Source of the DNA: Callorhinchus milii
Lineage: Eukaryota
DNA length: 64,000 bases
Assembly: GCF_018977255.1 (NCBI RefSeq)
Contig: NW_024704744.1
Span: 71,486,001 to 71,550,000 of the forward strand
Reading direction: 5' to 3'
This document shows positions 24,561 through 48,942 of the stretch, one piece after another. The stretch's first letter is position 1; each line of letters opens with the position of its first letter. A program made the position numbers and the translations under genes. The notes beneath the pieces were generated by a model that was not told the DNA's origin, did not search any database, and saw only the letters and a program-made list of their open reading frames with translations.

Positions 24561-24773
<213 letters not shown>

Positions 24774-27952: not shown

Positions 27953-28597
27953 CTGAAGAAAAATACACACCCTTCTTTTAATGACTTAAACATATACAAT
28001 ATGCTATAAGTTATATTAATAAATGATAAAACTGCAGTTAAAAATAACTTATCTTTTTTAACGTTTAATTAACTATGCCTACAGTATACAACTGTAACTA
28101 CATAACATCCAGTACTTCCTCAGTTAGGACTGCTTTCCCTGCCAGTTGGGGCTTAGGCTGGCAGGATTGAGAACATGTAAACACCTCCGAGTCTGATTGG
28201 TAAAACAGACAGGCTGGGCAATCATCAACCGTGCCTTTATTACTGCAAACTTACCTGGCTTTGCAAAGCCCATCTTCTCAAAGCCAGTTGAACTCCAAGA
28301 ATTTAAAAAAAATTCCAGACTAAAGTTGTGAAGATTTCTGTCCTATAGAATAGCTACAAAAGCACCTTCAGTAAGGTACCATGTAGAGGGTATATCCCGC
28401 ATACTGAATATAGTCAAGATTCTCAATTACCAAAGGAAAATATTTTTGTTGGCAAAATTCCCAGTAATTCTTTCCCAAATTCAAATTGTAGATTGCCTAG
28501 GCACCTTCAAATAACAAAATTATTTTAAGGTAACCAAAACATTGCCGCCAATACAGAATACATATATAAAACAATGTTTATACAAACTTATTACTTA

Positions 28598-28774
<177 letters not shown>

Positions 28775-29400
28775 CTATTGAATGGGCAGTAATTTAGAAA
28801 TGATCAGTTCATTTAATATTTTTTAATTTACATTGCACTTGATAAATGTCCCATAGGATCTCAAGAGTTTCACAGTAATTATAGTCACGAATACAGTTTT
28901 GTGAGCAAGCAAAGTAGCTATGTTGCACTCATTAATGTTTCGCAAATAGCCATGAAGCAAATGATCAATTAATCAGTAAGACTGGGTCAGCTGGGCACAT
29001 GGAGAAATTTTTGAAAAAAAACTTATTGAACAGTTTCAACTAAAATTAGTAATATGAAACCATAAATAATTTCCTGAACACTGCTTGCCCAGAAAAAAAA
29101 TCGAGTCAATGTTCTTAAGCAAAAGTAAAACAGTCTTCAAGTGATTGAGAAAACAAATTAGAAAATGATTGCAATTAATCTTTAAATTCATAATCATAAA
29201 TAATCTAAAACATATTAGCGAGTCAAATTAAAAAACTTTTGAACAAAAATGGGTATTTGTAATTTCAATTCCAGAAATTATTTTTATTAAAAAAATAAAC
29301 ATAATTGTTTTATACAGAGGATCACAAATTCTCTTGTTCTACTGTGTAACATATATGATAACATATATAGACCAAAAGCAATAAAAATAAAATGGTTTAC

Positions 29401-29623
29401 CTATAAAGGTCTGATTCTAATAATGTTAGCTGCCGTGCAATTTCTATTGGATGCAAAGTTAGCAGATCAAATAATTCAATTTGACCAGGCCTACTTATAT
29501 GCCATTCTATAGGAGGTGGCAATGTTTCAAATGTAATAGCATGGCCTGGTCCATTTGCTTGTGCTTGTTTTTTCCTCTGGATGATTTTAGTAATAGATTC
29601 AACCCATTTCTTCATGGCTTTAC
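29401..29623 (-). CDS. SOS1: SOS1 exon 14 equivalent (KAMKKWVES...LLESDLYR)
   Basis: 223 nt, canonical AG/GT. Confidence 0.96.
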
Positions 29624-29725
29624 CTGCATCAGAAAATAGAAGGAATCATATTGATAATCATGCTGCTTTTACAGTCAATGTATTTTTAAAGTTGCATGTA
29701 CTGATACCAAATCATGGCCCCTTAC

Positions 29726-29829
29726 CTCTTACTTTTCCAATGAAATTTTCTAGACGACTTAATAGTTCTGCGTCTCTTTCAAAGTCATAGAAATGATGTT
29801 CCACCCAATGCCGACATACATTCAGAACT
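29726..29829 (-). CDS. SOS1: SOS1 exon 13 equivalent ([19 protein letters not shown]...KVRG), REM domain; most 5' SOS1 exon found
   Basis: 104 nt, G|gtaag donor. Confidence 0.95.
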
Positions 29830-30250
29830 CTTTTAGACAACAGAATAAAAACATATTTAAATCTCATGCTCAAAAGGAAAGAAATTTGAAAATGCATTGT
29901 GATGTTGAACACACTCTCAATATAGTCCAAATACCTACAGAACAGTGACAACACATCTACTCTACTATATCAATGGAAAGAACCATAACATCTACCAGGT
30001 GACATACTATTGTACAGCGCAGGAAGGGAAAGCCACATAAACACCTTCAAAGTATTTGGACATCAAAAATGGGTTCAAGGGAGCTACTTCAGCAGTGATT
30101 CCCCAACATTAAATAATCAGAAAATATGCTTACATGTGAAGTCTTCTTGGAACTGAATTGGCTCCAAGGTGAAATAGCAAGACAATGTCAGATTTGAGTT
30201 AATCCTCAAGGTCTTAAAATGGGGACTTTCTGATGTGGGGAAAGCATGTT

Positions 30251-30456
30251 TGGCAAGCTTCCTGCTGCTTATCCAGAAATCAGACTAGTCTGGTCTACCA
30301 AATGGTTCCGTAGTGCTCCAGGCACTGCGGATGACAGATCAGATAACCAGGTTCATCGGTAGGACAAGGATTCTTCCAATTCAGCTTTTGGTAACACTGC
30401 AAGCTAAAGCTCTAAATAGGATAGTTCCAGCTGGATAAGCAGCAGGAAGCTTGCCA
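30251..30456. repeat. Perfect 26-bp inverted repeat with 154-nt spacer
   Basis: tggcaagcttcctgctgcttatccag (30251-30276) and ctggataagcagcaggaagcttgcca (30431-30456). Confidence 0.95.
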
Positions 30457-32042
30457 GAAAGTGCTTTCAACTCCAAGCTATGTGGTTTTAGCTGGTTAAA
30501 CTCGAGCAGAACTTTAATACATATTTACGGTCCCCACGTCTTAGGTCTTGCCAACCTCTGCCTAATCTTCTCTGGAATTAGGTAAATAGGATGCGCCCCT
30601 CTGGAGAGAGAGCCCTTTCCATTCTTGACATGGGAATTTCCACTTGTAGGTGGTATGCATGGAGTTAAATAATGTTCTTTGCACTTGATGCAGCGCCTTT
30701 TGCATCCGGAAGACTTCTCAAAGTGTTTCACAGGATTTAGTGTAAACGATAGTGACTAGGTTCTGGTGGTAAACGCCCTTGCCACTGTTCTTGTAGCAAT
30801 GTCCCACAAACAGCCATGAGGTAAATTACTAATTTTGTTTGGGGAGATTGTGGCCAGGATGCCCGGAGAAATTCCCTTCTTTTTCAGCTTGTGCCACCAG
30901 ATCTTTAATAGCCTTGTCTTTTCCCCCAACACCACTCCACACACGCACTTGCAGTAGTCTAGGTAAGGCTACAGTGTTCGATCTGCAGTGTTTCCAGGTT
31001 CCTCTCATTAGCCCTAGGACAATTTGAGTTGTAACCTCCATAAAGTATACTTATTCTCCAGTAATAGATTTGTAAGGTCAGTTGTGTATTTGTAATTAAT
31101 CTACGGCTGCAAAGTACAAAGTGTCTTCTGTTATCAACAAATTTATATAGACCTAATAAGAAATTGATTCAAGTAGGTTATTTTGTTAGGGATTTTTCCT
31201 GTGTTTGCATAGGTGTATGCGGATGCCAGTAAAATCATTTTTGTAAATGAGCACTACAGCCAATTTGTGCACAGCAATGTCCAACAAACAGCCATGAAGT
31301 GAATGGCTGATTTTATTTGGTGGATTGTTAGCCAGTTTAATGTTAGCCAATTTAACGTCACGTCTAAAGGATAGTGCCTCTGTCAATGTTGTGCTCCCTG
31401 GCACTGCATTTGAGTATCATTTTAGATGGTGAGTTTGCAGTCCCAATGTGGGGTCTGAATATACAACCTTCTGACTTTTAGGCTTGTGTTCCCGCTACAA
31501 ACCTGAGCATGATAACTGATCTCCTTTGTCCGACCTCTGTTCTCTGCTGGGATTACCTTAACAACCATTTGCAATGAAAGACGCTGACTAATTCACGAAC
31601 ACCCGGGAATGAGTGCAACTGACAATTGCATATAGTACCAAATGGAACAATTCTTATTGTACAATATTGCAATTTTTAAAAAAATATCCTTTGGCAATTT
31701 TCAATCCAATTTTTTTTCTTCACTCGATGTTGAAGTGATAGAATGTTTGACTCTCAAATATAGGAAGAAAGGTTCGAGCTCCTATGAGACTTATTTTTTT
31801 CAAGAAAAATTCTACAGAATTCTTACCATGAGAACTAGGTGAAAAGATTATTCTATTATTTTAGTGGTGGTTGAGAACTTCCCTTTCTTTTTTTAAAAAG
31901 GAAGTTTTCAAATGCCTTTAAATTGATTCCTAATGTATTTATTCAGATGGAGAATTAATAATAATAATAGTAATCCTTGCATTTGATAAAGCACTTTTCA
32001 AGTCTTCGAGACGTCTCAAAGCGCTTCATGGAATTGACTATG

Positions 32043-32063
32043 TATATATATATATATATATAT
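32043..32063 (+). repeat. (TA)n microsatellite inside a SINE tail
   Basis: tatatatatatatatatatat. Confidence 0.85.
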
Positions 32064-35000
32064 GTGGGCGAAATTGTGTGTTCAGTGAACGTACATTGTG
32101 ATGTGTTGCTGCCCACCATCCCTATGGTTATGTGCATGTGTGCTTCTCGTCTATCAAAGAATGCATTAAATGTGTGGATCTTTATACCAGTATTTTAATC
32201 TTTCAGTCAGAATGGGAGCACCATCATTGTTCAGGAAGTATGTGTAGCTTTTTTTTAAAAAAAACCTTGTTTTGAGTGTTGGTCTCTGAATGCACCATTA
32301 AAGGTTTTTATTTCTGAGCTAATAGCAAGTTGGGACTCAAAGGATTGCTGTTTAAAAGAGCCGGCACAGACGCAACAGGCTGAATGCCCAGCTTTGGACA
32401 ATAAATTTATATAGTTCTAAGATTTTCCCTTTGACTTCCCCCCCCACCCACCTGCCAAAAAAATGGAGCAAATTCTAGAAAAGTCAAACTCGTCTGTCTG
32501 GGGTTAACAGGCTATCTGTCCGTTATTTAAAACCAATGGATTACAATTCATAACTCTAACCCTCTTTCCTATTTAAGACATTTAGAAGTTATCTCTGAAG
32601 AAATCAGAAAGACTTGGATTTGCTCAGAGGATATTGTAAGCCTGTTGCTCTTGTTTTTCTTTCTTTTGCTAAGATCAAAGAAACTTTTTTTTCAGCTTGG
32701 TGAGTGAAAGCAAACTGCTTCTCACAGCCAGCTATTGTTTGTCTTTATAAGGTTAGTTGTCACGTCAGTTAACTGATAATTACAGTTTTACAGAAGTGAT
32801 CTTAAATATTCTTGTCCTTTTAATCGTTTGAGCTGCCTAAAAGCCACAGTCCATATCGGCATCAAATAGGTATAATTTTAAAGTCGATCATTTTAAAGTA
32901 CAGGAAAAGATGTAGAGAAGATAGCCATAAGTGTACCCCAAAGTAGGTTGTACTGACAATTGAGCAGTACACTCTATTTCTTAAAATTAGTTTCTCTTTC
33001 AGATGAGAGTTAAACCGAGGTACCATCCACGTGTTCAGCTGGACGTTAAAGATCCTGTGGCACTATTTGAGAAATGAAGTGAATTCTCCTGGTGTCCTGG
33101 CCAACGTTCCTCAAACTCAAATTGGTCATTCACTTACTTCATGGTTGTTCTGGGACTTTGCTGTGTGCAAATTGGCTGCCACGTTTGCTTACAAAATAGT
33201 CACTGCACTTTACATTAAATCTTGTAAGTTGCTTTGACATCTCCTTACCTGTAAGGCACGATAGTCAAATGTAAGGATTATTTTTATTTGGTTTTAGGCT
33301 ACATTTGAAAACTTGTATATTGCCATTAGGCAGGCTTATGTTTCGTGAATTCTCTAAACCTGAGAATTTGTACTTTTTTTAAAAAAAAATTCCGCTGTTG
33401 TATGTTACTTGATCTATTTTTACTTGATACAGTAATGCAATTTAAATGAAGTAGGAGCTTGTATAGTAAAGTTGCGTCTACATTGCATCCTTTGATCTGT
33501 GGAAAACGTGAACAGATTTTTGTTTAATGATTTTTGCTTTTAATGTAACCACAAATGATAAAACCGACAGGCAGACCAAAAAAGCATTATTAGGAGTTGA
33601 GGGCTAAATACTCGGTCTTCAAGAGAAGCTTCTTAGATGCTTGGGCTTTGCATCATCAGACCTCTTTGTATGTATAATCTCTGAAATTGGTTTCCTGAAC
33701 TTCGAATGCTCACTTTTCTCTATCCAATTCATTATTGACGTTCAAGTTGAAATATTAATTAGCCCATTTAGTTTGGGTAATTAATCCTTACATGTGATGC
33801 TTGTCTTGTGTTGTGAGGATATCTCAAAATGCTTAAGGGGGTTTACTTTGAAGTGTAAGAACTGTATATTTAGGTTGTTATTGTCAGCCAGGACATTGGG
33901 AGGAACATCCATCTCGCAGTCCCGATGTAGGTCTTGAATCTGTGATTTTCGGCCTCTGAGTTGAGAGTGCTACCGACTGACACCTGGACAAACTCTGAAA
34001 ACTTTTTTTCTCTCTCTCTCCCCTCCTCATAGTTGTTTGCTTACCTTCACTCCTAATATATCAAATTGTACGACATTGCTAACTATATAATTTCTTTGAA
34101 CAATTTTTCTTTGTTGCTTTTAAAGCGACCTTTGACTGGTGACATTTGACATGATTTGGATATTACCAAACCATAATCAGGGTGTTGATAAGGCTTGTCT
34201 GCTATTCAACTGGGCAATTTTAGTCAGGATATTTTTGACTCTACAGCTATAGTTGATTATTACTGTGAACTATAAGACCCAGAGTGCAGTCCAAGGTAAA
34301 ACATTTCTAATGTGTGCGAGTACTTTTTTTTCTAAATGTGTAGCGTTGTGATAACTACAGCAGTTGAGATCCATATTTATTGATATGTAAAATTTTGAGA
34401 GGAAGAGAGGTCAGTAAATGTTCCACAGCCTGTGATTTTCTCTTCTACACATGGAATATAGAACAAGAATCCTCGTTAGTCCAAAAATAAACTATTCTGT
34501 GTATGATAATTTTTGATCAGCGCTAAGTGCACACATTCAGGAACTATATATTTCAGCCGAGAGGGAATTCATGTCCTGTCGAAGCTGTTGCATCAAGGTG
34601 GCTTTGGCAGTAGAGTGAATCGATCAATTTGCTGATGCACCAGACTTGTACTGGGTTCCCTGAAAAGCACAAGTGAGCTGGGCCTTGAAAGATTACATAG
34701 AACGACATGCCACGGAAACGGCCCACTCAGCTCCTCCGTAGCCGTCCAGATGGGCCGAAGAAAAAAAAAAGTGCAAACCCTAAATGGTGATGATAGGTCA
34801 AACTTTCCAAAATGTCTGTTCTGCAGCAGGGAAAGAAGCCTGCTGCTCTAATACCTGTTTGGATAGAGGATGGTGAATTATTTTTAATGTCTTGCTTTTA
34901 GCCCCAGGCTCCTGTTCAACAATCCCATTCAATACAAATTATAGTTATGTAAATTCTTGTGAAAGGAAATGGGTTTTCCTCTTCCTTTCTCAATAAACGC

Positions 35001-36950
35001 TTTTCTTTCTGTCCCAATAGAGGTTAACGAGGAGGGGAAAACCAGATTGCTCGCTTATCACTTTTTAAAAAAAAAATAACCAACTTCCTCCGAAGTTTGG
35101 AAGCTTTTGCAAAGAAAAGAAAAAAAACTTGCTTTTTATTGCCCCTTATGTTAGCGCATCTCAATGTGCTGTACGTTGATTCTGCTGAATGTAGCGAATT
35201 TTTTATAGGCAACCCAGCAGCCATTTTGTGCACAAGTCCCAAAAATTGCTATGAAATGATTGAAAATGGATATGTAGGAGATACTGTAGGCCAGGACACT
35301 GGGACAAACTATCAGCCACTTTATCCACCTGAAGAGGGGGCAAGCAGGATTTCATTTTCATATCGTGTCTGAAGGACAGTACTTCTCTAGTACTGCAGTC
35401 AGGCTTGACTATGAGGGCTGACTTGGGGCTCGAAGCCAAGGCCTTCTAGCCAAGAGGCCAGAATACTACTATCTGAGCCAAGCAAGCACCCAAATATTTG
35501 AATGAATGTGTGGGTCTTGCAAGTGTGCTTTTTATGTGCTGATTGCAAGGTTTTGTTATTAAGATAGCAATATGCTAAACTTGGAAGAAAGAAATTGGAG
35601 GTAGGGTAAAGTGTGTAAACTTGTCACAGGCTTTAATTTCCCCTGAGATTCGTATAAAGCAGGTAGCCGTGAATTTTAAATGAAAGCTGGGTAGATTTAA
35701 AAGGCACAATCTGAATAGATAATCGGCTGACGCTGCTTTCAAGCTACTCACCCATATTTGGTAAGATTTTTTTAAATGTAAAATTGCATGGGTTTGGATT
35801 TTTTGCAGTTTCTCTTAAAAGGTTTGAATTCAAATAGGGTGACGCATGAGTGAGATGCAGAGTAAAGCTTCCTGCCCCAACAACCAACAATAAACCGCAG
35901 TCTGGAGCACGTTGCTGCAATGTGCCTTTCTTATTGAAGGGGTTGCATATTCAGTTCTGATACCTTTACCTTTCAGTAAATCAACAGTAGACTTGACCTG
36001 TATTCACTAAAATTCGCTCTTTCACCTAATTGTCAGAGCGACATGTAATCCTATCATCTGCCTTGGTATACTACTACATCCAATCCTAAAGGTTACTCAC
36101 TGAGCTTAATTTCTTTCTGCTTCTGTCCTTTGCACTTCCCTCCAGACCATTCTCAAGCAGGTGTTCAACGCAACTATTCTTACAAAGGATGGGAATCAGA
36201 CATTCCTTAGAAAAAGCAAATCAAGCTTCAAGTTTTGTAGTGTGAAAATGGAATGCACTCCACCTGAGGGCCTTGGAGATGGATAGGATACTTGAAGGTG
36301 GTCAGGTTGATATTGGGTATTGAGAAATGGCTATTGACTATTTTGATCTGTTGAAGAGTCGGTCACGAGAAGCCACAAATTGCGAATTTCCGTCTGAAGA
36401 GAAAAGAGAGGATTAGTTTATTTTTGATCTGCATGTAATCTTGTTGTTGTTTAGAACACAGGAAGCTATTTTGATCCTGTTTGAGGCAAGTCCATAAATG
36501 GCAATTTAAAGGGAATTTGATAATTGCCTCAGGAAAGATATGCAAAAAGACATGCGATTGGAGCAGAGATGTTTGATGGAAGAGTCAGCGTCGGTGTGAT
36601 GAGGCCAAATGCTTTCCTATAATAATAATAATCCTTGCATTTGATATAGTGCTTTTCACGTCTTCTAGACATCTCAAAGCGCTTCACAGAATATGCTGTA
36701 AAGTGAATTGACTGTATATTTGTGGGTGAAACGCTCACAAATATAATAATCTATAGTATATATAACAGTATAAATATAATAATAAAATATGATGTAATTA
36801 TAATATAATAATCCTTGCATTAGATATTGTGCCTTATCGCATTAAAATTATGTATTTTATATGTACATTTGCTATAAACCTGATTCTAAATGTCAGGATA
36901 GGAGGCTATTCATCTGATTTGTGCTTGTGCCAGGATAGTTTACCATTGGT

Positions 36951-36975
36951 NNNNNNNNNNNNNNNNNNNNNNNNN
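36951..36975. other. Assembly gap (25 N)
   Basis: Run of N. A single N also occurs at 13571. Confidence 0.99.
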
Positions 36976-37471
36976 GTGCACTGTAGGATATCCCTTTAAG
37001 AAGTAAAAGGCAATTGAGAGACAACAAGATAGACCGGCAATAGAAAGGGACACTGGGAGTGGGACAAATTGGTGTGGTTATGCTGAGTGAATTGGAGGGC
37101 TCTGAGTTGCTAATAAAGGAACCTAGTAAACCTGTGATATTTATTACATGCATTACTACCATTTCCCTTTCCCATACTCTTTCATTTTCAAGTGTATCCA
37201 ATTCCCTTTTTACCACTCAGTTTGCTTCCAATTCCCTGTTTTAATTGACTCACTGTGGCAATGTGTTCTGTATCTTAGTAATCATATTGTGCAGACATCC
37301 TTTTTTTGTTTGCTTTTAGTAATTTTTTTTGAAGCATCTTAGACCCCTCCCCCACCACCATATCCTCAGTAAATGCTGTCTCAGCTTCTTTCAGCCAAAA
37401 TGTTCATTCACCATTCTTAAGCTTTTGACTGTTGTTCCTTTTGACTGAAACTCGATTCCACAGCTGCTGGG

Positions 37472-37825
37472 TAATAATAATCCTTGCATTTGATGTAGCG
37501 CCTTATCATGTCTTCGAGACGTCTCAAAGAGCTTCACAAAATGTACCGTAAAGAGACCTGACTGTATTTTGTGGGTGAAATGCGGCAGCCAATTGGACAC
37601 AGCAGTGTCCCACAAACAGTCATGGATTGAGTGACCAAATTATTTTTTTTTAAGGAATTATTACTCCCGGAAAAATGATTCACCAATCGACTAACAGGGT
37701 TCCTACTCACTGCTGAACAGAGGCATCTAGAGTAAGGAAACTTGACAAACGTTTCACCCTGCTGGGAATCAAACCCAGGTCTCTCACATGCGAGGCAAGT
37801 GCTCTGACCATTAAGCTACAGGACT
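37472..37825 (-). mobile_element. Full-length tRNA/Deu SINE (long variant)
   Basis: Same head, core and tail, with an extra central segment (caatcgactaac...cctact). Confidence 0.9.
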
Positions 37826-39256
37826 CCACTCCCAATTCCATTGGGTACCCCAACGCCTTAGTTGATAGATACATTTATTGTGAGCTTTGGCAGTAAATAA
37901 TAATAATAATCCTTGCATTTGATATAGCGCTTTTCACGTCGGGAGGACGTCCCAAAGCGCTTCACAGAACACACTGTAAAGTGAATTGACTGTATATTTG
38001 TGGGCGAAATGTCTGTCTAGGCCAGTAGTGACCAACCCATTGGCCTGTGAGTCTGCTCTAAATCAATGGTTTGTTTCTAGTTTTTTTTTCTTGATTTGAT
38101 TTATGGCATAAATCGATAAGTATCCAAGGGGTGAGCTTGTTACTCTGGGTGGCAAGTTGGAGAAGAAACCTTTGCTGATGTTTTTCTTTTTATTCCTTTT
38201 CTTGCCCCCCCCCCCACTTCCATCAATACCCAGAGGTTTGCTGAGTTCAGCTGTAGCACTCCAGCTGCTGCCTCAGCTGAGAGCAACTAAACCAGTACAG
38301 CAAAAATTTGTCATTCTGGGTCTTTATGGTTCAGTGCTACAAGGCTTTGTTTGTCCACTAGGTCGTTGTGGGAGGCAGTCTCAAATTACTCAAGCTTTCA
38401 TAACTATCCTCTCATCACTGGTATTACTCTTGGGAGCTTCTCCCCAAGTGTGTGTCGGGCGTGGGGAGTAGGGTCTAAAATCAGAGTCTAAAAGTAAATA
38501 GCTGATTTTATATCTGCCTCATCTAGACTGTAATTTTATAGATTGTTTAAGCTGCTCCTAGCCATTCTTGACCTTCGGTTGAGAAGTGTGGTTTTCTGCA
38601 AATTTATGGGGTGAGGAATTATTTTGGAGAATTGTAAGTCTCATAGATGCTGAAAGTTTCAGTCTTGTGGTCTAGCAACAGATGTTGTGGTTTACATGAG
38701 CTTTTGGACACATGAAAACCGGAAATTGACTTCTGATTTGAACAGTTTACACATTCTCTGACTTGACCACTATTTTTTAACTTGTTGCATTAGTTTCAGC
38801 GACATTTCATACAGTTGAGCTTGAATAGTAATCTTATAATGTTTCCCTTGTGAAACTTTCAGGTTTGGCCCAGAAATCAAAAATTAAAGCTGGGAGTTTG
38901 CATAAAGTTTGGGTCAAGTAGTTCGATTTGATCACGAATAGGACATGTGACCAATAGATTGATTTTCGACTTGACAAAGAATATCAAGATGAGATATTGA
39001 CCAAATCCCTTATGAAAGAAGGTAGCCTGCATTGAAGTATCAGCAGAAGCTTTTTTTAAATGCTGTTCAATTAGTTTATTCCCTCCAAATCATTCCAAGG
39101 ATTCCTGAATGTTTGCTTCATACTAGTGGAGTGGGAGAAAGGGTTTCTTCGTGCATGGAATAAAAAGTTTGAAGTACCAGTTTAATAAAAACATTTTAAA
39201 AACATTTGAACTTTTACTGGGGTGAGAAGTGGTAAAGAGAGGCCATATAATGCCTA

Positions 39257-39551
39257 GATAATGTTGAGAGAGTGATTGTCAGAACTACAAAACATAAAAA
39301 ATGATCAATCTCCTGCACTATCGCATTGAGCAGTATTTAAATATTGAAATGAAGGATAATGTTGAGAGAGTGATTGTCAGAACTACAAAACATAAAAAAT
39401 GATCAATCTCCTGCACTATCGCATTGAGCAGTATTTAAATATTGAAATGAAGGATAATGTTGAGAGAGTGATTGTCAGAACTACAAAACATAAAAAATGA
39501 TCAATCTCCTGCACCATCGCATTGAGCATTTATTTAAATATTGAAATGAGG
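39257..39551 (+). repeat. Tandem repeat, 98-bp unit x3
   Basis: Units start at 39257, 39355 and 39453 (gataatgttgagagagtgattgtcagaac...). The first two appear identical; the third has a few changes. Confidence 0.97.
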
Positions 39552-40029
39552 AAGTCCTTTAATTTCCTCTTCCTGAATGATATGTGACCCATTAGATCAA
39601 ATCCGTCCTGAATTCTTGCACAGAAGCCAAATATCCTTTGGCCTTGCTAGCCAGAAAATCCGGACTGCATTCCCACAGAGAGATGACTGAATGTGGAATC
39701 TTCCTGACTTTGATCTTTCATATGGATGATGAGATCAAAGTGTGGGAGGGAAAGAAGCAGGCAAAGAAATTACTGGAAGATTATTAATGGTCATAGAAAA
39801 GTGGTGCTCCATACATCTTCAATACAAATAGAGGGGACTTTTATTCTCTTTCTCCCCCCCCCCCCCCCCCACACCAAAAAAAAATAGTTGAGTAGCAAGA
39901 TGGAATCTCAAAATAGACTGCAGGAAATTCTTGTGGATCAAATACTTTTTTCTTAAATATATTTAAAACGTTAGCGAAACTTTCCGTACACTCTTGTTTG
40001 GCGAAAATAAGGAGGACTAGACTTGGCCT

Positions 40030-40591
40030 GGGTTCTGGCGAGATGTTGGGCAAGTTTTCTTACTCCACATAACTCTGTTTACATAACATAACATGCAGGA
40101 GTAGGCCATTTGGCCCTTCGAGCCTGCCTCGCCATTCAATCATGGCTGATCTTCTAATCTAACTCTAACCCTGCCTTATCCCCATATCCCTTAATCCCTT
40201 TTGCAATAAGAAATATATCTATCTCAGTCTTGAATATGTTCAAGGACTGAGCGTCAACAGCCCTTTGAGGTAGCGAGTTCCATACATTCACCACCCTAGT
40301 AATACATGGGACCTGGTTGTTAGTCGATTGGTAGATTGCTTTTCCGAGAGCAATAATTCCTTTATATAAAAAAATGATAATTTGTCATTCAATCCATGAC
40401 TGTTTGTAGGACACTGCTGTGCACAATTGGCTGCCTTGGGCGAACAGTCCCAAATTATTATTATTTTTTCTTGAGGGATTATTATCAGGCGTGTGGAGTA
40501 AGGAAACTTGCCCAAGGTTTTGTCCTGCCAGGAATCAAACCCAGCTCTCTCGCTTGTGAGGCGAGTGCTCTAACCACTGGGCTACAGGACT
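40030..40591. mobile_element. Inverted SINE pair (+ copy about 40030-40440, interrupted by CR1; - copy about 40445-40591)
   Basis: gggcaagttttcttactccaca (about 40048) versus tgtggagtaaggaaacttgccc (about 40492). Confidence 0.8.
40081..40297 (-). mobile_element. 5'-truncated CR1 3' end, same family as 52178-55115, inserted into a SINE
   Basis: Near-identical to about 52178-52408 (gtaggccatt...cccttcgagcctgcc...ttccatacattcaccaccct). Confidence 0.9.
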
Positions 40592-43500
40592 TTACAATCT
40601 TAAGCACTTGCATAACAGTAAGTGTTAAATGGTGAAAAACGACACTTGGATTTGAACAATTAGCTTTTACAGTTGTGAAAATGTGAGAATATTGTCTTCC
40701 TCCTATAGTCTATTATTACCTTTAGCTCAAATGATGGTTGATCCCTTGCTAGGTCACAGATTCTGCATTCAAGTCCCAAATTGGTGCTTGAGTTGCACAC
40801 AGGCTGACACAGCAGTGCAGTGTGGGGAAGGCATTGTCATAAATACCGTACTTCAGATGAGAAATTAAATTGAGGTTTCACACTCTTTTGCTGTTCCCGA
40901 GGATTTATTCAATTTTCACTCTTGCTTTTGCTTACACTGTATGGAAAGCACTGCACAATAATAATCCTTGTACTTGGTATAGCGCCTTTCATATTGGGAG
41001 GACATCTCAAAGCACTTAACAGGACATACTGTAAAGCACAATATCTGAATTTTGTGAGAGAACACAATGGCTAATTCGTGTACAGCAAAGTCCATTTAGG
41101 TTACTGACTTTTATTTAACAATGTCAGTTGAACAGCTCTTGCCATTTGATGGGGTTGGTAAGATTGGTTCCTTCGGCCTAATATCAGCTGAGAGCTCATA
41201 ACTAGAAGACTTCTCAAAATATATTAAACTGGAATTGTGTGAAAGATTGACATAATGTATTTTGGATTAAAACCTGTGCCATCTCTTGATATCTTATAAA
41301 TGCTTAGTTTTTTTTTAATATTTCTCTATGGTGCAATTGCTATTTTTCCTCCTTGCCCCCCCACCAGAAGATGTGAGGAAGTGAGCTGGCAGTTGGTCAA
41401 AAGTATTCAAGCTGCAATTTCCTATAGACTACGGGAGGGAGAGGATCAAACTCAATGTACCGTTTATGTTCTTGAACATTTTTTCTCTCCTTGCGTCCGC
41501 TGGTCATTTGTTGACCAAAGACAGCCGGACGTCTTGCTTAGTGCCTTTCCATTTTCCTCCTCTTTCTCTTCTCCCAGCCTTGTTTAGCCTCTAGTTTCTT
41601 TAGTTTTGCAGAAATAGATTGGGAGCCTTTCATGTAGCATTGGGTTGCACCATTCCACGATGTCTTACATTGAACGTGTATATGTCTGTGTGCCTGTGCA
41701 CGCATACATTGGTAAAACTCTGCACTTCCAACTGGTGGAACACTGCTCAATGGACCGGGAATGTGTATCTTGGCTCCAGGCATGAAGGACGGTGGCAGTC
41801 CTCTTGCACATTTTAGGCTTAGTTGTGTTCTCACTGGGAAGCTTGCAGGGAATCCCTGATGCTTTCTAGCAAGGATGCAGCCCTGCGCTTATCGGATGTC
41901 TAATGACCAACTAGTGAGTATCCTAGGGAGGGGTGGGAAGTGAGGAGTTCTCATTCCTGAGCTGAGGCTGGGGGTTGGGTAGGATTCCAAGGTTCTCTTA
42001 ATCGCTGAATGCTCAGATGTCTTTGTCTGCAAGACTGGAGGAGCAAACCGGGGGCGGGGATTTTCCCCCTCCCATTCAGCTGATGCTCCTGTTAGCCCTG
42101 AAAGCTAAAAATCTTAGCTAAAAAGACAAGCAGTGGGAAGCTGCAGTTTTAAACTCCAGCAGTACCCAATACGCACTGTGGTCCCTAAGCCTTGGCTATT
42201 GCCATCCTTTGCCTATAGTTTCTGGGAATGTGGCACGAAGCACGCTCCTACAAGGAGATGATGTGTACTCCGTTCCAGATCAGTGGACATTTCCTTGCGT
42301 GCATGGAACATTCAACATTCAACTTAGATAATCTTAAGTATGGTAATGAGTTTCTGTTTGTCGAGCCACGGAAAGGCAGATCACTCTATTCTCACCTTGT
42401 AGGAAATGATGGCTCAGTCCCACATGCATAGAACAATGCATTTTCGTCAGTAATTGAATTGAAAAATGATTATGTAACTTTGCAATAACTACTTCCTCTT
42501 GAGCTCAACCCCTGCAAAATGCAAACGCTAAAATTGTTTATGCAGAATACAAAGTCTCTCTTTCTGCCCAAACTTGTATCTATGTAGCAAATGCACCATT
42601 TCTACTAATCTGGTCCTTAATAATAATCCTTAGGTTTGGTATAGTGCCTTATCATGTTGAGACATCTCAAAGCGAAATGTGGCAGCCGATTGCACACAGC
42701 GAAGTCCCATCGACAGCAACAGAGCGAGCAATTTTATTTGGGAGATTATCGGCCAGGACACCAAGAGACAAAAAATGTCCTTCTCTTTTCGAATTGTTCT
42801 TTTCCTGCGTTTGCTTCAAATGCCACACACTTATGCAGTGCAGTCACTTTACAGTATATCTTGTGAAGCAATTTGAAACATCCTCTCAACTTGAACGGTG
42901 CTAAATCGGATGCAAGGATTATTATTTCCCAACCTGCCCTCCAGTACCTTGCCTGAGTAGCTATTCTGTGTTTGAATGCTCCAAGTCGAGTACTGGCCAA
43001 ATTTGACTTTGAGAGCTGATATAGTATAAATTTACATTTATATAGTGGCTTTCACATCAGGAGGACATCTCAAGGTAGCCCAACATGTGTATCCTTCTTG
43101 CAGGTCTTTTCAAGGCAGGCAGGCATGTTGAGCTAGAATGTGTTGATCTGCAGCTTCATAAACCTTTGACAATATGGTTAGATAATGGCATCGTGGAGCC
43201 CTTTTATAGGATGAATATCAGTGGATATAATGCACCGTGGAACTGTGTGCAAACGGGGACAACTTGTCATGAGAAATTTACACAGAATTTTTTTTAGAGT
43301 CACTCTGGGTCCTGGTATTTGCGTCTTTGACTTTCATTGAAGTGTTTGAGAGCCGGACTGATCAGCCACTTCAGGCTGATTGTTGGCGGTTGTTTGTCGC
43401 ACGAAGAGGCTACTTGTAGTTTAAATTTCAATGTATTTGTACATCTATTTTAAAACAGCGAGTTGATTTAGTGTCTGATTACAGGGCTTGCGCAAAATGA

Positions 43501-44082
43501 AAGCGTTGCAGTGTGTGGATCTTTATATATAATATTCACATTTGTATCGTACTTAAATATACACATTCGTAACTTTTTTAACCAAAAGCCGCATAGACTT
43601 GTTTCCTTTGACCCATGCGTGTGGTTCTGTCTTACTTCACCATCTGCGTGCTGCCTTTTTAACTTGATGATCATTCCTCTGAAGATGGAGAAATTAGAAC
43701 AGGACTAAAATTGAGAAGCAAGGGAGGGAAGCTGGAACTAGACTATGAAATCGGATTTTTCTTTCCCGCTTAATAGTAAGCGGGTAAATGTCGCATCTCT
43801 AGAACACTTTTTTTTTAAACATTGAATGAGTGCAAACTGGTCTGCACAGTCTCTTTTGTGGCTTTGACTTGGGTGGCAGCCGGGCAGGGGCCAACACTTC
43901 CTGTTACCAAGAGAGGCTTCAGGTGGTCAATTGATGGAGTGGGTCTGGTAGTCTTCAGAGTTCTTGTTTTGTTTTGTTCCACGCTTGCTTTTTTTCAACA
44001 CAGACCGTGTGGTCGGTGTCTGCTCTTTTCCAGCTATGTTGCGACAGTATGGCTGCAGTGTACAGAATTATATTCTTTGAGT

Positions 44083-44266
44083 AGTCCTGTAGCTCAGTGG
44101 TTAGAGCGCTCGCCTCGCAAGCGAGAGACCTGGGTTTGATTCCTGCAGGGCGAAATGTTGGGCAAGTTTCCTTACTCCACACGCCTCTGTTTACCCTGCA
44201 GTAAGTAGGAATTTGGCAGATCGCTTTTCTGGGGGTAATAATTCCTTCATAAAAAAACAATAATAA
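44083..44266 (+). mobile_element. tRNA-derived SINE 5' half (A and B boxes)
   Basis: agtcctgtagctcagtggttagagcg...gggtttgattcc...gggcaagtttccttactccacac. Confidence 0.88.
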
Positions 44267-44772
44267 AGGCTGCAGATAATCCAGAACTCTGCAGCCCGTG
44301 TCCTCTCCCGCACTGGGCTCCGTGACCCTATCACCCCCATCCTCGCCCCACTCCATTGGATTCCCATCACATAGGGGATACAGTTCAAGATCCTGGTCCT
44401 CACCTTCAAAGCCTTCCATGGTCTTGCTCGCCCTTATCTCTGTGACCTCCTAAACCCCTACCACCCTACTTGCTCCCTCAGCTCAGCGGGCTCTGGCCTG
44501 CTTCACGTCCCCCCACTCACTCGCCCCACTATTGGCGGGTGGGCCTTCAGCCACTCTGCCCCCGCCCTCTGGAACTCCATCCTGCAGTCCCTCTGCCTTG
44601 CCCCTTCCCTTGCCTCCTTCCAAGACCCATCTCAAGACCCTCCTCTTCAACCGTGTTTTTGATCACCCACCTTTCCCCCCCCCCCCCCGCCCTCCACCCT
44701 TCCCGATCCCTGACTGTCCAACGTATGTCCTCCCGATGTGAAAGGCGCTATACAAATGTAATTTTGTTGTTA
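44267..44772 (+). mobile_element. L2 3' fragment fused directly to a SINE 5' half
   Basis: High similarity to 22818-23335. Confidence 0.88.
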
Positions 44773-45334
44773 TATGGTGTAATGCACAATGTAATATAAT
44801 CTATCCGATTTTGATCCCTTAAATTGTATTCCAGCTTTCTTTGTACTAGACCTTGGGTTACCTGCTTCTTCACGCAGAACTATAAAAAGTCTAGGACAAA
44901 GGAAAGGTTAGCTGCAGCTTTAAAATTAATGAGCTGGTGTAATTTATCAAGACACTCGAAACTACTGTTGAGCTTGTCTCATCCATTGGAATAATTTCTG
45001 TATTTGCATATCTTCAGGTTTGTTGTACCTTTATGGTGTTTACTTCCAGATAATATGATATGCTTATTTCATTCTGCATTTTTTATGTCAATAAAACTCC
45101 GGGGGAGTTTTGATGACACAAACCGTATGAATTGATGCCCAAAACACCATATAAATTCGGCAGCATACAATAGCAGCTATTGGTGTTTTTGCTATGGCAT
45201 CGATTTGCACTTTTCTATTTTAAATGCCGGTAGAATGAATCAATTCAGTATCCACACAAAAAAAATCCTTTACAAGTTCCAAAGGACTGCTTACAATGGG
45301 CTGAGGTTAAGTTCTGAGATAAGAATCATATCGA

Positions 45335-45619
45335 GTCGGTAGCTAATAGCTGTTTATTTCGCCTCATAGATCTGGGTTCAATTCCCGGGCAAAGAGAAAC
45401 CTTGGGCAAGTTTCCTTAGTCCACATGCCTGATAATCCCTCAAGAAACCAAAACAATAATAATTTGGTCACTCAATTCACAACACTGCTGTGCACAATTG
45501 GCTGCCGCATTTCGCCCACAAAAAATATACGGTCAATTCACTTTACAATATATTCTGTGAAGCGCTTTGAGACGTTGTGAAGACGTGATAAGGCGCTGTA
45601 TCAAATCAAGGATTATTAA
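45335..45619 (+). mobile_element. tRNA/Deu SINE
   Basis: B box ggttcaattcc, core and tail. Confidence 0.85.
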
Positions 45620-46297
45620 TGGCTGCAAGTCACAGCAACGTGAGGGGTGGCTGTGCTGAGGAGATGCTTGTGGATTTAAATCCCAATCCCAGTTTGAGGA
45701 GGCTTGCAAGAGATGGTCACTGATTCTTCCATCTAGTGCTGAGACAAGTGGCGTGACCTGACCTTGGGTGATTGATTAAAACAGGGGATGAAAATGTACT
45801 TGATACAATTGCAATAGTTATTGGAAAAACTAGGGAAGCTGGAAATCTAGAATCCAAATGAAAAATGCTGGGACTTGATGGCACAGCTAGACAGTGGAGC
45901 TTAGTTCACCTATCTTTAGGTGCTGATTGTTTCCTTTTTTAAAACTATTTGCAGCAACGTATTTGGACACGCAGGCTACCTGGTACTGCTGGCCTTATAA
46001 ACCAATGTCTACAGTGGTGTAAGGCTCACCAGACTTGCTTACCCAATACATGATTAGCTAGCCTGATCATGGTCTGTTTGTAAATCCTATAATAAAAGGC
46101 TCGATTAAAGTGTTACTTTCTGATCGATGCAACTGAAGAGTTCTGCATTAAACTTTTCCCAGATTTTTAAGATCGACAACCATCTCCCTTGCCAGATATA
46201 AGGTTCAAATATCAAAATGAATGCCTTCATGAGTACCTACAGTAATTGCAGAATAAAAATGTGCGTTGTGCTGATGGAGCTTATTTCCGTTGTTTAG

Positions 46298-46416
46298 GAA
46301 CATGCTGATGACCGGTACAAGACCTCGCCTTCCCTTGTGGTCCATGTCAGGGGTCTCTGCGATGGTGTCGTTGAAGCAGATTTAGTGGAGTCTGTCGAGA
46401 GGTTTGGACCCATAAG
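46298..46416 (+). CDS. hnRNP L-family gene (HNRNPL/HNRNPLL-like) exon 2, RRM1 start (EHADDRYKTSPSLVVHVRGLCDGVVEADLVESVERFGPIS)
   Basis: tgtttag| acceptor, AG|gtaagt donor, 119 nt. Confidence 0.93.
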
Positions 46417-46639
46417 GTAAGTGAGTCACTTGTGAATTGTTGCTTATCTGAGTTGCTGGTTTTGGGTCAGTGAGGTGTCGGCTGCAATTTGTTGGATTTT
46501 TTCTAATGCTGATTCTTGATGGTAACCTAATAACCTTATAAGATCACAAGATTGTTTGGGGTGAAGAATGCACCCAATGTCATCCCTCCAGAATACCACG
46601 CTGCTATTTCTATCCCCCACCCCCATCACAACATCAAGC

Positions 46640-47040
46640 TACTTTTTAAACTAGTCCAGCATCCTCGCTTCAACCACCCTTTGTTCCAGTCATTAATTGC
46701 CCTCTGGGTAAAGAAAAACTTCATGGTATCTGTCTTAAAGCTGCCTTTGCAACTCTAATCTCAATGGATTGTTCTGGGTTTAAAATGTACACCTCTGAGG
46801 TCCCCTCTGACTCTTCTCTCAAGACTGAAGATCCCTACTTTTCTAGTTGTTGCTCATTCCTTGAACACTGGGGATCATCCTTGGTGCTCTCCTCTACCTC
46901 TAGGCCCTGGACAGCCCCCTTATGTTACAGTGACCAGGGCTGTACACAGTACTCTGTGTGGTCTGACCAGAACACTGTACAACCTGAGTGACATTTGGAG
47001 ATATAAACAGCGATTTAGCAATGTAGCCCAGCAGCCAGCT
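46640..47040 (-). mobile_element. Old CR1 fragment
   Basis: ccagtcattaattgccctctgggtaaagaaaaac and cagtactctgtgtggtctgaccag resemble the CR1 ORF2 end. Confidence 0.6.
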
Positions 47041-48942
47041 GGCTGTATTTATGGGCATATAACTGAGCCAATGTCTCAGTTGGACCCATCCAGTGAGATT
47101 TCCCTGTGGTATAATGGGTGGTGAGCACCCCATGTTATAGATCAGCATAGAATAACCTCATGCTGTTCTCCAGCTCAATGCAGGCTACAAACCAGGCTAC
47201 AAATATATCCACCCAATTGGTCTGTGTGGGATACATGTTTTGCTGAACTTAATAGTTCTTCTCTTGGGTGAATAGGATCTCTGCATGTGAGGTTTGTAGG
47301 TTTATTCAAATGTTGTCTGTAGAAAACTTAATCCACCTTGAAATGATCAATTTTTCAGCAAGATAATGGAGTGTGGTTTGCTATAAAGAAGGCACCCTAT
47401 CCTGCAGTATCAGCCAGTAAATACCAATGCCACATCTGCTTAATAGTGTTGCATTGCAAGTGGGAATCTATTCATATTCACTACGCTATGATAGGTCAGT
47501 AAATCAGCCATATTCTGTATGGAATAGAAACGAAAATTGTCAAATCTTAAAAAAAAAGACTATCCTCGTGCACCATATCCGAACAATCTGCTGGGAGTTG
47601 CAGCTGAACTGCTTCTGTGGTTTGAGATAAGGGTTAAACTATTCGAACTTCAGTTTCCCAGTTTGATGATCCTTTAACTCTTGTGGCCCCATAAACCATT
47701 ACAGACTTCAATCTGCAGCTGCAGTATCAGATATTTTGGTGTAAAACACTCTTTACTTGCAAAGCATAGATAGGTGGAAATCCAGAAAAGCTCAAACAAG
47801 TGGATATAAAATATTCTATTCAAAAACGGAAAGGAGTTTCTCCAGGTGTCCAGGCCAACAATTTCTTCTCCCTTCTCTCCCCACCTCCACCCAATAAGAT
47901 TGGTCATTCACTTCATGGCTGTTTGTGGGACGTTAACGGGAGAATATTGATGTGTGTAAATGTACTGCCTCGTTCAACTATAAATACAGTGGCTACACTC
48001 CACAATAAATCCTGTAAAATACTTTGAGGCATTTCAATGCGATGAGGTACCCCATCAATTGCAAGTATTTTAAATAATAGTATTCAAATTTGCCAAATTG
48101 ATTATAAGAGTCACAGTTTACCCAAAGCTGTGACAACTGACCTGATGGTTTAAGCTGATTCCCTTGTAGGGTTTCATGCTTGTTGCATCAGGTACTGGTC
48201 CAAATAATTTAACCCACAACAGCAACTTGCATTTATGTAGTGCCCCTCATGCAGGGTAGCGTCTCAGAACTCTCAACGGGTAGGAGCCTAATGCCGAGCC
48301 AGGAGGGAGGTGGTGACAGGAAACACGGTCGAATAAACTAGTAGTATGTTCTTGTAACACAGAAATGCAAACTGACATCTATACTGTAACGTGTAATTAA
48401 AATTACAATTTAAGGCTCTGATTAATTTATTAAACATCACTTCTTGCTGTCTATAGAAATTATTCCTTTCACAAGATAAAGATTGCTATACTGCTATTTA
48501 ACAATTGTGGTTGGATAAAACACTGCAATGGTTTCCCCAGTTTTGCAGGATTCGGTTCTATTTTTGGGTCATTATTTGGACTTTTATTTTAAATTACAAA
48601 TCGGGCTCTTCCTCTTTCATATATTTTGGGCCGTTAAACCTACATACAAAGTCTAAACAAGTACAAAGCATGACCATTATCTCTGATTATTTTTGGAAGA
48701 CACTTCCTTTTAATATGAAACCGGCTCTCTTTTGTTATAGTCATCTTCAACCAGAAGCTGCAAAGAATTTGGCTTGCTCCGTTCAACAAAAACTTGTTAA
48801 ATGGCTGGCGGGGGCAGAATGAGGAAGAGGCTACAGTCCAAACTTAACTCTACATAATTGTGCAAATGTATTGCTAAATACTGTTACTTATTCCAAAGAA
48901 ATGTTTAGATCCAAGTGGTTATAACTATTGTTTTTGTTGTAG

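What the first reader, a model, noticed from the sequence alone, without database searches (positions are those of the whole stretch)
29830..46297. Two headless genes back-to-back: probable inversion breakpoint, misjoin or chimeric junction near 30.1-30.7 kb
Seen: SOS1 exons run regularly up to the exon-13 equivalent (29829). I find no exon 12 (FEIPEPEP...), no large PH/REM exon and no DH or histone-fold exon anywhere further on. The hnRNP L-family gene starts at exon 2 (46298) with no first exon or CpG island upstream. By eye the + strand changes from A/C-rich to T/G-rich at about 30.1-30.7 kb, well before the N gap at 36951. Recalled human order: HNRNPLL(-)...ARHGEF33(+), SOS1(-). Inference: one inversion with breakpoints in HNRNPLL intron 1 and SOS1 intron 12 gives exactly this layout, and the reciprocal junction would join the two 5' halves. 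Alternatives are an assembly misjoin, an artificially joined window, or nesting of the hnRNP gene in a giant SOS1 intron.
Basis: partly seen in the sequence, partly recalled or inferred. Interest (0 to 1): 0.82.

Follow-up and report, generated by a model that had tools for sequence, protein, structure and literature searches.

The report
Two truncated genes joined by misassembly
In the elephant-shark reference assembly the back half of the SOS1 gene is butted head-to-head against an hnRNP-L-like gene that lacks its first exon, but older gene models and DNA from other fish show that this join is peculiar to this one assembly, so it is most likely an assembly error (or at most a private variant of one fish) and not a feature of the species.

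Summary
The window (elephant shark, chromosome-level assembly) carries SOS1 exons for residues 664-1316 on the minus strand, ending at 29829. It also carries an hnRNP-L/LL-type gene on the plus strand from 46298. No SOS1 exon for residues 1-663 lies anywhere in the 64 kb, and I found no credible first hnRNP exon or CpG island in 29.8-46.3 kb. The strand-composition switch is real: repeat-masked AT skew is +0.045 on the SOS1 side and -0.066 from 30663 on, with the change-point at 30041-30650.

The biological reading is not supported. Older elephant-shark gene models give a full-length SOS1 (1316-1322 aa) that joins exon 12 to exon 13. The current RefSeq model on a 99-Mb record is a 665-aa stump that starts in intron read-through at 29867. 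Contigs from 3 of 3 informative public runs (2 studies) match the window from exactly 30663 rightwards. Leftwards they carry 485-624 single-copy letters that do not fit the window.

So the join lies in a repeat cluster (30030-30910), 6.3 kb before the N gap, and is specific to this assembly. Most likely it is an inverted or omitted block with a closed gap. A private inversion or deletion in the sequenced fish is the main rival. Nesting is effectively excluded. The scan noted several other gene-breaking "inversions" in this genome.

The parts
12547..13038 (-). SOS1 last coding exon (P0337 residues 1153-1316)
   Evidence: exact match, 0 mismatches. 89-92% identical to shark SOS1 tails but only 67% over 46 residues to the species' SOS2.
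14018..28720 (-). Eight further SOS1 exons: 14137..14018, 14897..14856, 20708..20427, 23848..23732, 24752..24579, 26155..26036, 27951..27790, 28720..28598 (residues 773-1152)
   Evidence: 1 mismatch in total. RasGEF domain hits for 27736-27999 and 24561-24773.
29400..29624 (-). SOS1 exon-14 equivalent (residues about 700-773)
29720..29829 (-). SOS1 exon-13 equivalent (residues 664-700). It encodes only the last 30 of 106 positions of the RasGEF_N (REM) profile, so the gene is cut inside the REM domain.
29830..30029 (-). Remnant of SOS1 intron 12. RefSeq XP_042189067.1 starts here, at 29867, with 12 intron-derived residues.
   Evidence: P0334 begins [12 protein letters not shown], which is window 29867..29832. 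X5 contig 25 runs from exon 13 to 30465.
30030..30465 (.). Low-copy repeat (about 4-9 times single-copy depth) holding a perfect 26-nt inverted repeat, 30251-30276 / 30431-30456. It is still attached to the SOS1 side.
30466..30662 (.). High-copy repeat 'R' with no other copy in the window. The join lies in it or at its right edge.
   Evidence: summed depth above 3000 in bin 30430-30629; no in-window homologue
30663..30910 (-). tRNA-derived SINE copy whose 3' end is at about 30663. This is the first base that contigs of other samples share with the window.
   Evidence: aligns to SINE copies that end at 37472, 21019, 6360, 60749, 33285; records 9, 17, 26
30663..36950 (+). Segment with plus-strand-type skew. 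Contigs of other samples tile it continuously from 30663 to 35829. It is probably HNRNPLL intron 1; alternatively it is a flipped piece of SOS1 intron 12.
36951..36975 (.). 25-N assembly gap. It is not the composition switch. Continuity across it is untested.
36976..46297 (+). Intron sequence upstream of the first conserved HNRNPLL exon. It contains SINEs with tRNA heads at 37754-37825, 40520-40591 and 44083-44153.
46298..46417 (+). First conserved exon of the hnRNP L/LL-type gene (start of RRM1; 'exon 2' by recalled human numbering)
46418..64000 (+). Rest of the hnRNP L/LL-type gene. Exon-bearing ORFs at 48947-49240, 51627-51809, 60443-60673 and 61673-61918 match profile positions 32-435.

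Best explanation
The head-to-head join of a headless SOS1 and a headless HNRNPLL is a property of this one assembly. That assembly is IMCB_Cmil_1.0 (PacBio CLR, Falcon, Dovetail Chicago + Hi-C, HiRise). The join is not a property of the elephant-shark genome. It sits in a roughly 0.9-kb cluster of repeats (30030-30910), and its right edge falls exactly at 30662|30663, the 3' end of a SINE.

The most likely history is inferred, not shown. A contig ended, or was broken, in this repeat cluster inside SOS1 intron 12. The scaffolder then placed it against sequence from HNRNPLL intron 1. That could happen in two ways: a block running from HNRNPLL intron 1 to SOS1 intron 12 was put in backwards (inversion-type error), or the block carrying SOS1 exons 1-12 and HNRNPLL exon 1 was left out (omission-type error). 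The gap at the join was later closed through repeat sequence.

Shown: the layout, the position of the switch, the conflict with older gene models, and the conflict with other samples' contigs. Inferred: the mechanism, and which of the two error types applies.
For: 1. Older models of the same species are full length and join exon 12 to exon 13: XP_007892574.1 (1316 aa), XP_007892573.1 (1207 aa) and Ensembl/UniProt A0A4W3H6X9 (1322 aa). Such models need collinear exons in the older assembly.
2. The only current NCBI member of that protein cluster is XP_042189067.1. It is 665 aa, lies on a 99,087,298-bp record, and starts in intron read-through at window 29867.
3. The 11 exons here differ from the old model at 1 residue and have no stops, so this is not a decayed gene half.
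4. Three contigs begin to match at exactly 30663 and carry 624, 586 and 485 further letters to the left that do not lie on the window: X2 record 9, X3 record 17, X5 record 26. Their mean word depth is 6-12, so those letters are single-copy DNA and not the high-copy repeat that the window has there. The runs are 3 samples from 2 studies. A fourth run, X1, has no listed piece at that place.
5. Rightwards, single-copy contigs tile 30663-35829 with breaks only at repeats.
6. The join lies wholly in repeats, and its edge coincides with a SINE end.
7. The composition change-point at 30041-30650 agrees with the read-based edge.
8. Full-length SOS1 exists in other cartilaginous fishes: P0222, P0223, P0215.
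9. How the assembly was built comes from Table 1 of PMC12952989 (passage seen) and a results passage of PMC8302630.
10. Earlier notes of this scan list several other gene-breaking, gapless 'inversions' in this genome (unchecked). So many in one fish fits a systematic artefact better than natural variation.
Against: 1. The join is gapless and lies inside what looks like continuous long-read sequence. With 68-fold PacBio coverage a 0.2-0.9-kb repeat should not mislead a contig assembler. Chicago/Hi-C checking did not break it either. Both points fit a rearrangement that is real in the sequenced fish.
The reciprocal junction and the whereabouts of SOS1 exons 1-12 are therefore unknown.
3. Contigs show presence, not absence. 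A window-like junction at low frequency in X1-X3 or X5 cannot be excluded.
4. I did not see the unmatched contig letters themselves. They could be a diverged (under 95% alike) relative of the window's sequence.
5. That gap closing was applied to this assembly is my inference, from the odd gap lengths (25 N here, 30 N in note s1-905933). Supplementary Note 1 of PMC8302630, which describes the assembly, could not be read.
Confidence: 0.62

Rival explanations
1. A real but private or rare structural variant of the sequenced fish. It could be an inversion with breakpoints in SOS1 intron 12 and HNRNPLL intron 1. If the two genes are truly head-to-head neighbours in this species, it could instead be a deletion of their 5' parts. 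Either would arise by breakage or recombination at the SINE / repeat cluster. The long-read contig would then have taken that haplotype faithfully.
For: The junction is gapless and sits in long-read sequence that survived Chicago/Hi-C checking. The edge falls exactly at a SINE end, as in SINE-mediated rearrangements. The exons on both sides are intact, as expected for a young allele. The other samples and the old models would simply carry the normal allele.
Against: It would be a null allele of two conserved genes at once. It was seen in none of the 3 informative other samples. The scan's earlier notes list many similar gene-breaking inversions in this same assembly (unchecked), too many to be natural in one fish. 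The contigs of other samples match the window's SINE almost perfectly from its very first base (0-1 differences). That leaves no room for a crossover inside the SINE, so classical homologous recombination is not supported.
Confidence: 0.27
2. A variant of the assembly-error reading. The 6.3-kb piece 30663-36950 is a small piece of SOS1 intron 12 put in backwards. The true SOS1/HNRNPLL misjoin, or a missing contig, is at the 25-N gap.
For: If flipped, the piece's AT skew (+0.066) would match the SOS1 side (+0.045) as well as it now matches the HNRNPLL side. The piece is bounded on the right by the only real gap. Small-piece orientation errors are a known weakness of proximity-ligation scaffolding (recalled, not from a call).
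Against: It needs two errors instead of one. There is no N gap at 30662|30663. There is no composition switch at the gap in the present orientation. I count this inside the 0.62 of the best explanation, not in addition to it.
Confidence: 0.15
3. A fixed, species-level inversion that really split both genes, or true nesting of HNRNPLL inside a giant SOS1 intron 12.
For: Only the layout itself.
Against: Full-length, collinear SOS1 models come from the older assembly of the same species. Other samples lack the window's sequence left of 30663. No SOS1 exon 1-12 lies in the 34 kb to the right. The genes after HNRNPLL are a STUM-like gene and ATL2 (note s1-903967, unchecked). RefSeq could not link upstream exons. 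The strand skew flips at 30.0-30.7 kb, whereas one intron transcribed on the minus strand would keep its skew.
Confidence: 0.03

Closest known systems
Scaffolding or gap-closure misassembly (inverted or omitted block) in a long-read plus proximity-ligation assembly
   Same: The junction lies in repeats. It conflicts with an independent assembly's gene models and with contigs from independent samples. The exons on both sides are intact. The annotation pipeline produced a truncated model.
   Different: There is no N gap at the junction itself; the only gap is 6.3 kb away. So an extra step, gap closure or a chimeric contig, has to be assumed.
SINE/Alu-associated structural variants (inversions or deletions) that truncate genes
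   Same: A breakpoint sits at a SINE end inside introns. Two genes would be truncated at once. The coding sequence is otherwise unchanged.
   Different: It was not seen in any other sample. No reciprocal junction was seen. There is no evidence for a crossover within the SINE.
Nested genes inside large introns
   Same: A gene on the opposite strand lies where an intron of another gene should continue.
   Different: The host gene's upstream exons do not reappear beyond the putative nested gene, and the strand skew does not behave as one intron would.

Membership tests
SOS1 (Ras guanine-nucleotide exchange factor) | RasGEF (CDC25-type) catalytic domain | tested here: met
   PF00617 hits for exon ORFs 27736-27999 (E 5.5e-16) and 24561-24773 (E 4.5e-05)
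SOS1 (Ras guanine-nucleotide exchange factor) | Complete REM (RasGEF_N) domain, plus DH-PH and histone-fold N-terminal half | tested here: not met
   Only positions 77-106 of 106 of PF00618 are encoded. There is no tblastn hit for residues 1-663 in the window. The locus holds a gene fragment, not a whole SOS1.
SOS1 (Ras guanine-nucleotide exchange factor) | SOS1 rather than SOS2: the proline-rich C-terminal tail | tested here: met
   The tail is 89-92% identical to shark SOS1 (P0222, P0215). Against the species' own SOS2 (P0208) it is 67% over 46 residues only. The match to the old elephant-shark SOS1 model is exact.
hnRNP L / PTB family (HNRNPLL) | Ordered match to the family profile with its RRM domains | tested here: met
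   TIGR01649 positions 1-29, 32-135, 129-161, 271-334 and 368-435 occur in plus-strand order. Each exon alone scores below the whole-protein cut-off, as expected for pieces. The exons were not joined.
hnRNP L / PTB family (HNRNPLL) | LL paralogue rather than L | not tested
   The first exon's best solved-structure hits are hnRNP L RRM1. The LL name rests on the recalled chr2p22-type neighbourhood (SOS1, ATL2) and on recalled sequence motifs only.
Biological chromosomal inversion | Both junctions present, and the junction carried by reads of the individual and/or other individuals | tested here: not met
   Only one junction is in the window. 3 of 3 informative other samples lack the window's left side at 30663. 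The reference individual's reads were not available.
Assembly misjoin | Conflict with independent assemblies and reads, at a repeat | tested here: met
   Old full-length models against the new 665-aa stump. Contigs diverge at 30663. The repeat cluster spans 30030-30910.
Assembly misjoin | The junction is not spanned by the reference individual's own long reads or linked reads | not testable with these tools
   The one read-laying run used other samples' contigs. No run could be identified as the assembly's source.

The most novel reading that the evidence does not exclude
The sequenced elephant shark really carries, probably in one copy, a rearranged allele that beheads SOS1 inside its REM domain and HNRNPLL after exon 1 in a single event. 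The event would be an inversion of the HNRNPLL-to-SOS1 block, or a deletion between head-to-head genes, made at a SINE end next to a 26-nt perfect palindrome-like repeat. That would be a natural double knock-out allele segregating in a wild fish.
Probability: 0.25. Interest if true: 0.35.

Novelty: not a real feature. Interest (0 to 1): 0.12.

Why it matters
Mainly as a warning. The current RefSeq annotation of the elephant shark gives a 665-aa 'SOS1' that begins with intron-derived residues and lacks the histone fold, DH-PH and most of REM. HNRNPLL probably also lacks its true start. Anyone using this assembly could be misled at this locus, whether for synteny breakpoints (this lies in a paralogon used in whole-genome-duplication reconstructions), gene-loss calls or domain evolution. 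Together with the other gapless gene-breaking 'inversions' that the scan noted in this genome, it suggests a systematic class of local errors worth checking against the raw reads. If the junction proved real, it would be an ordinary, if neat, private structural variant.

Tried and rejected
1. Missing exons in the window. tblastn with four full-length SOS proteins, the species' own included, found none. This rejects the idea that exon 12 hides in 30-46 kb.

2. Misjoin at the N gap. The skew does not switch there and the flanks do not overlap. It remains only as the 'flipped 6.3-kb piece' variant.

3. Partial duplicate alongside an intact SOS1 elsewhere in the new assembly. The protein cluster holds no full-length current NCBI member, only the 665-aa one. 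This makes it unlikely, though not excluded.

4. Search for a separate N-terminal-half SOS1 model in the new annotation (P0339 residues 1-600; candidate lengths 607-1930). No elephant-shark entry is among the best 120 of 899. This is inconclusive because of the length filter and clustering. It weakly favours the 5' half being absent from the annotated assembly, that is, omission rather than inversion.

5. HNRNPLL exon 1 by homology. This was not possible. I used an ORF/donor/CpG heuristic instead.

6. Naming the left-hand ORFs 2365-3204 and 4941-5237 as ARHGEF33. Pfam and NCBIfam gave nothing. For 2365-3204 the protein atlas gave nothing convincing either (best score 0.81, unrelated families).

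7. Rfam scan of 29000-47000. It found only three tRNA-like SINE heads and nothing at the junction.

8. Long inverted or direct duplications that would mark a fold-back artefact. None reached 300 bp apart from transposable elements.

9. Reciprocal junction or neighbouring genes in the scan's notes. The words SOS1, sevenless, ARHGEF33, MAP4K3, GALM, DHX57, SRSF7, CDKL4, GEMIN6, headless, misassembly and misjoin met no finding.

10. Papers.
- No paper in the library links HNRNPLL, GALM and the elephant shark (0 papers).
- A search for Callorhinchus milii + misassembly + inversion + HiRise listed 10 of 50 papers holding at least 3 of the 4 terms. None of the 10 holds the species name (listing only).
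- The search (elephant shark, HiRise, Falcon, Chicago) listed 3 papers and added nothing.
- PMC12241362 mentions the assembly only as 'higher-quality' (passage).
- I claim no more than that these searches found no report of this error.
Full report
WHAT THE WINDOW IS.
Earlier notes of this scan name the genome as elephant shark. The proteins agree. The minus-strand exons between 12547 and 29829 match residues 664-1316 of XP_007892574.1 (P0337, 1316 aa, Callorhinchus milii SOS1 of an older annotation), with one mismatch and no stop. The current RefSeq protein XP_042189067.1 (P0334, 665 aa, seen on a record of 99,087,298 bp) begins [12 protein letters not shown]. That is the read-through of the intron from window 29867 down to the exon at 29829. 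The window therefore comes from the chromosome-level assembly. According to Table 1 of PMC12952989 (passage seen) that assembly is IMCB_Cmil_1.0: PacBio CLR, Falcon, Dovetail Chicago and Hi-C, HiRise. A results passage of PMC8302630 gives 68-fold PacBio coverage and a contig N50 of 1.6 Mb. Its Supplementary Note 1, with the assembly details, could not be read.

CHECK OF THE OBSERVATION.
SOS1. A first search with one exon (window 29400-29615) gave full-length SOS proteins. tblastn of four of them found all exons for the C-terminal half and nothing better than E=0.33 for the N-terminal ~660 residues. The four were a caecilian SOS2 (P0005), bamboo-shark SOS1 (P0222), and the species' own SOS1 models (P0224, P0337). 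The search covered the whole 64 kb in all six frames. The gene is SOS1, not SOS2: the tail is 89-92% identical to shark SOS1 and barely alignable to the species' SOS2. The last exon before the break (29829-29720) encodes only positions 77-106 of the 106-position RasGEF_N profile. The cut is therefore inside the REM domain.

hnRNP gene. The exon at 46298-46417 is preceded by an AG and followed by GTAAGT. It matches positions 1-29 of the hnRNP-L/PTB profile TIGR01649, and later exons follow in order to position 435. It also aligns to the start of hnRNP L RRM1 in solved structures. The LL assignment itself was not tested. Between 29830 and 46297 I found only two ATG-to-donor reading frames of 25 codons or more in the right phase. 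Neither looks hnRNP-like by eye, and one (40396-40617) lies on a tRNA-derived SINE copy. I found no CpG island. This is a heuristic test, not a homology test.

Composition. Cumulative A-T peaks at 30460 and the combined skew at 30124. I masked in-window repeats and the LINE. The AT skews are then:
- SOS1 part: +0.045 +/- 0.010
- 30663-36950: -0.066 +/- 0.017
- 36976-46297: -0.093 +/- 0.016
- hnRNP gene body: -0.068 +/- 0.011
The change-point plateau is 30041-30650.

The gap (36951-36975). No switch occurs across it, no exon lies at it, and its flanks share only SINE tails. Whether the two sides are truly continuous was not tested with reads.

WHAT THE JUNCTION LOOKS LIKE.
From left to right:
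- Exon 13 ends at 29829.
- 29830-30029 is unique intron.
- 30030-30465 is a low-copy repeat, about 4-9 times single-copy depth in four runs. It contains a perfect 26-nt inverted repeat (30251-30276 / 30431-30456).
- 30466-30662 is a high-copy repeat with no other copy in the window.
- From 30663 there is a copy of the tRNA-derived SINE that litters the window. Its 3' end is at about 30663, because it aligns with copies that end at 37472, 21019, 6360, 60749 and 33285.
- Unique sequence resumes near 30910.

INDEPENDENT DNA.
Ten runs of the same species label hold part of 29830-35829. Four of them (X1-X4; one study of 2025; four samples; 0.89-0.96 Gb of contigs each) hold 73-82% of its words. I laid X1, X2, X3 and X5 (X5 from another study, of 2022) on 29830-35829.

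Right of 30663, contigs of single-copy depth tile the window up to 35829. Breaks occur only at repeats (31984-32074, and about 33070-33324 in X1). Two contigs, X2 record 16 and X3 record 24, run on about 810 letters past the stretch. That would end them near 36640, where the next SINE starts in the window.

At the junction, three contigs start to match at exactly 30663:
- X2 record 9: 786 letters, of which letters 625-786 lie on 30663-30824.
- X3 record 17: 748 letters, of which letters 587-748 lie on 30663-30824.
- X5 record 26: 975 letters, minus strand, of which letters 1-490 lie on 31152-30663.
I worked out the strand convention from records 8 and 4. Their remaining 624, 586 and 485 letters lie to the left and do not fit the stretch. 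Their mean word depths (12, 6.3, 7.4) are single-copy. Those letters therefore cannot be the high-copy repeat that the window has at 30466-30662. X1 has no listed piece there.

On the left, X5 record 25 (666 letters) runs from 29 letters inside exon 13 to 30465 and ends there. X1 and X2 show no depth at 29830-30029 and X3 next to none (0.76). The tool warns that this can come from its filter for conserved, human-like records, so I draw nothing from it.

I did not see the unmatched letters. Only the longest pieces of about 38,000 are listed. So I cannot say what lies left of 30663 in those fish, only that it is not what the window has.

INDEPENDENT GENE MODELS.
The protein cluster of elephant-shark SOS1 has seven members. 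Six come from the older annotation or from Ensembl/UniProt (1103-1322 aa). At least the 1207-, 1316- and 1322-aa models contain the DH, PH, REM and RasGEF parts in one chain. They read ...EYVQPVQL|RVLNVCRHW... across the exon 12/13 boundary. Such models are built on a genome and need collinear exons, so the older assembly had an intact SOS1. The seventh member, and the only one from current NCBI, is the 665-aa stump. Other cartilaginous fishes have full-length SOS1.

INTERPRETATION.
A fixed inversion or a nested arrangement is contradicted by the older models, by the other samples, and by the skew. What remains is a junction peculiar to this assembly.

I favour an assembly error (0.62). The junction lies entirely in repeats. 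Its edge coincides with a repeat boundary. The exons on both sides are pristine. The scan has also noted several other gapless, gene-breaking 'inversions' in this same assembly (unchecked by me), more than one fish should carry naturally. The irregular gap lengths (25 N here, 30 N in note s1-905933) suggest to me that a gap-closing step followed scaffolding. That could turn a wrong join into gapless sequence. This step is inferred from recalled behaviour of such tools, not shown.

Two forms of the error are possible, and I could not separate them.
- Inversion-type. A block from HNRNPLL intron 1 to SOS1 intron 12 was put in backwards. That order is recalled, not tested.
- Omission-type. The two genes are truly head-to-head in this species, and the block with their 5' parts was left out. 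The failure to find any N-terminal-half SOS1 model from the new annotation leans slightly this way, but it is inconclusive.
A third variant places the main misjoin at the N gap and treats 30663-36950 as a flipped piece of SOS1 intron 12. The skew fits that equally well.

The main rival (0.27) is a real private inversion or deletion in the sequenced fish. In its favour are the gapless long-read sequence and its survival through Chicago/Hi-C checking. Against it are the double gene knock-out, its absence from three other samples, and the near-perfect match of the other samples' contigs to the window's SINE from its first base. That match leaves no room for a crossover within the SINE.

LIMITS.
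- All three wide protein searches went to SOS1, so HNRNPLL exon 1 was not tested by homology.

VERDICT.
The striking biological reading is most probably an artefact. The practical value is as an erratum for the SOS1 and HNRNPLL models of this assembly.

Noticed in passing
window 30240-30468: A perfect 26-nt inverted repeat (37-38 nt at 92%) with a 154-nt spacer sits about 200 bp left of the junction. It lies inside a stretch that has about 4-9 times single-copy depth in four runs, so it is part of a low-copy repeat, perhaps a small transposon with terminal inverted repeats. It was already noted separately by the scan (s1-904296).
   Followed up: partly
window 29832-29867 (-): RefSeq XP_042189067.1 (665 aa) starts with 12 residues ([12 protein letters not shown]) translated from the intron upstream of SOS1 exon 13. 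This is an annotation artefact caused by the missing 5' half.
   Followed up: yes
window 52268-55313 (-): A LINE-type retrotransposon lies in an HNRNPLL intron. It has ORFs of 391, 133, 78 and 179 aa with reverse-transcriptase-like text, broken into pieces. It gave one weak endonuclease-reverse-transcriptase Pfam hit, E 0.0034, below the cut-off. It dominates the GC skew of 52-56 kb.
   Followed up: partly
window, many places (e.g. 37472-37828, 60749-61104, 21018-21329, 5804-6103): A tRNA-derived SINE family of about 355 bp has many copies or fragments in 64 kb. Three copies have heads still recognised as tRNA by Rfam (37754-37825, 40520-40591, 44083-44153). Summed contig depth at one tail fragment (31830-32029) reaches about 270,000 in whole-genome-like runs.
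   Followed up: partly
Pfam and NCBIfam gave no hit for either, and the protein atlas (2365-3204 only) gave nothing convincing (best 0.81, unrelated families). The name is unconfirmed.
   Followed up: partly
window 22818-23336, 44267-44774, 4099-4468: A second repeat family of about 400-520 bp is present, 70-78% alike between copies. It accounts for the only CpG-richer patches near 44.0-44.8 kb, which are therefore not a promoter.
   Followed up: no
window 13571: A single N lies in the intron just upstream of the last SOS1 exon.
   Followed up: no
window 27790-27951 (-): The one amino-acid difference between this assembly and the old SOS1 model lies in this exon; by eye it is Val here against Ile (RVTVVSRI against RVTVISRI). 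It is either a polymorphism between the sequenced fish or an error in one assembly.
   Followed up: no
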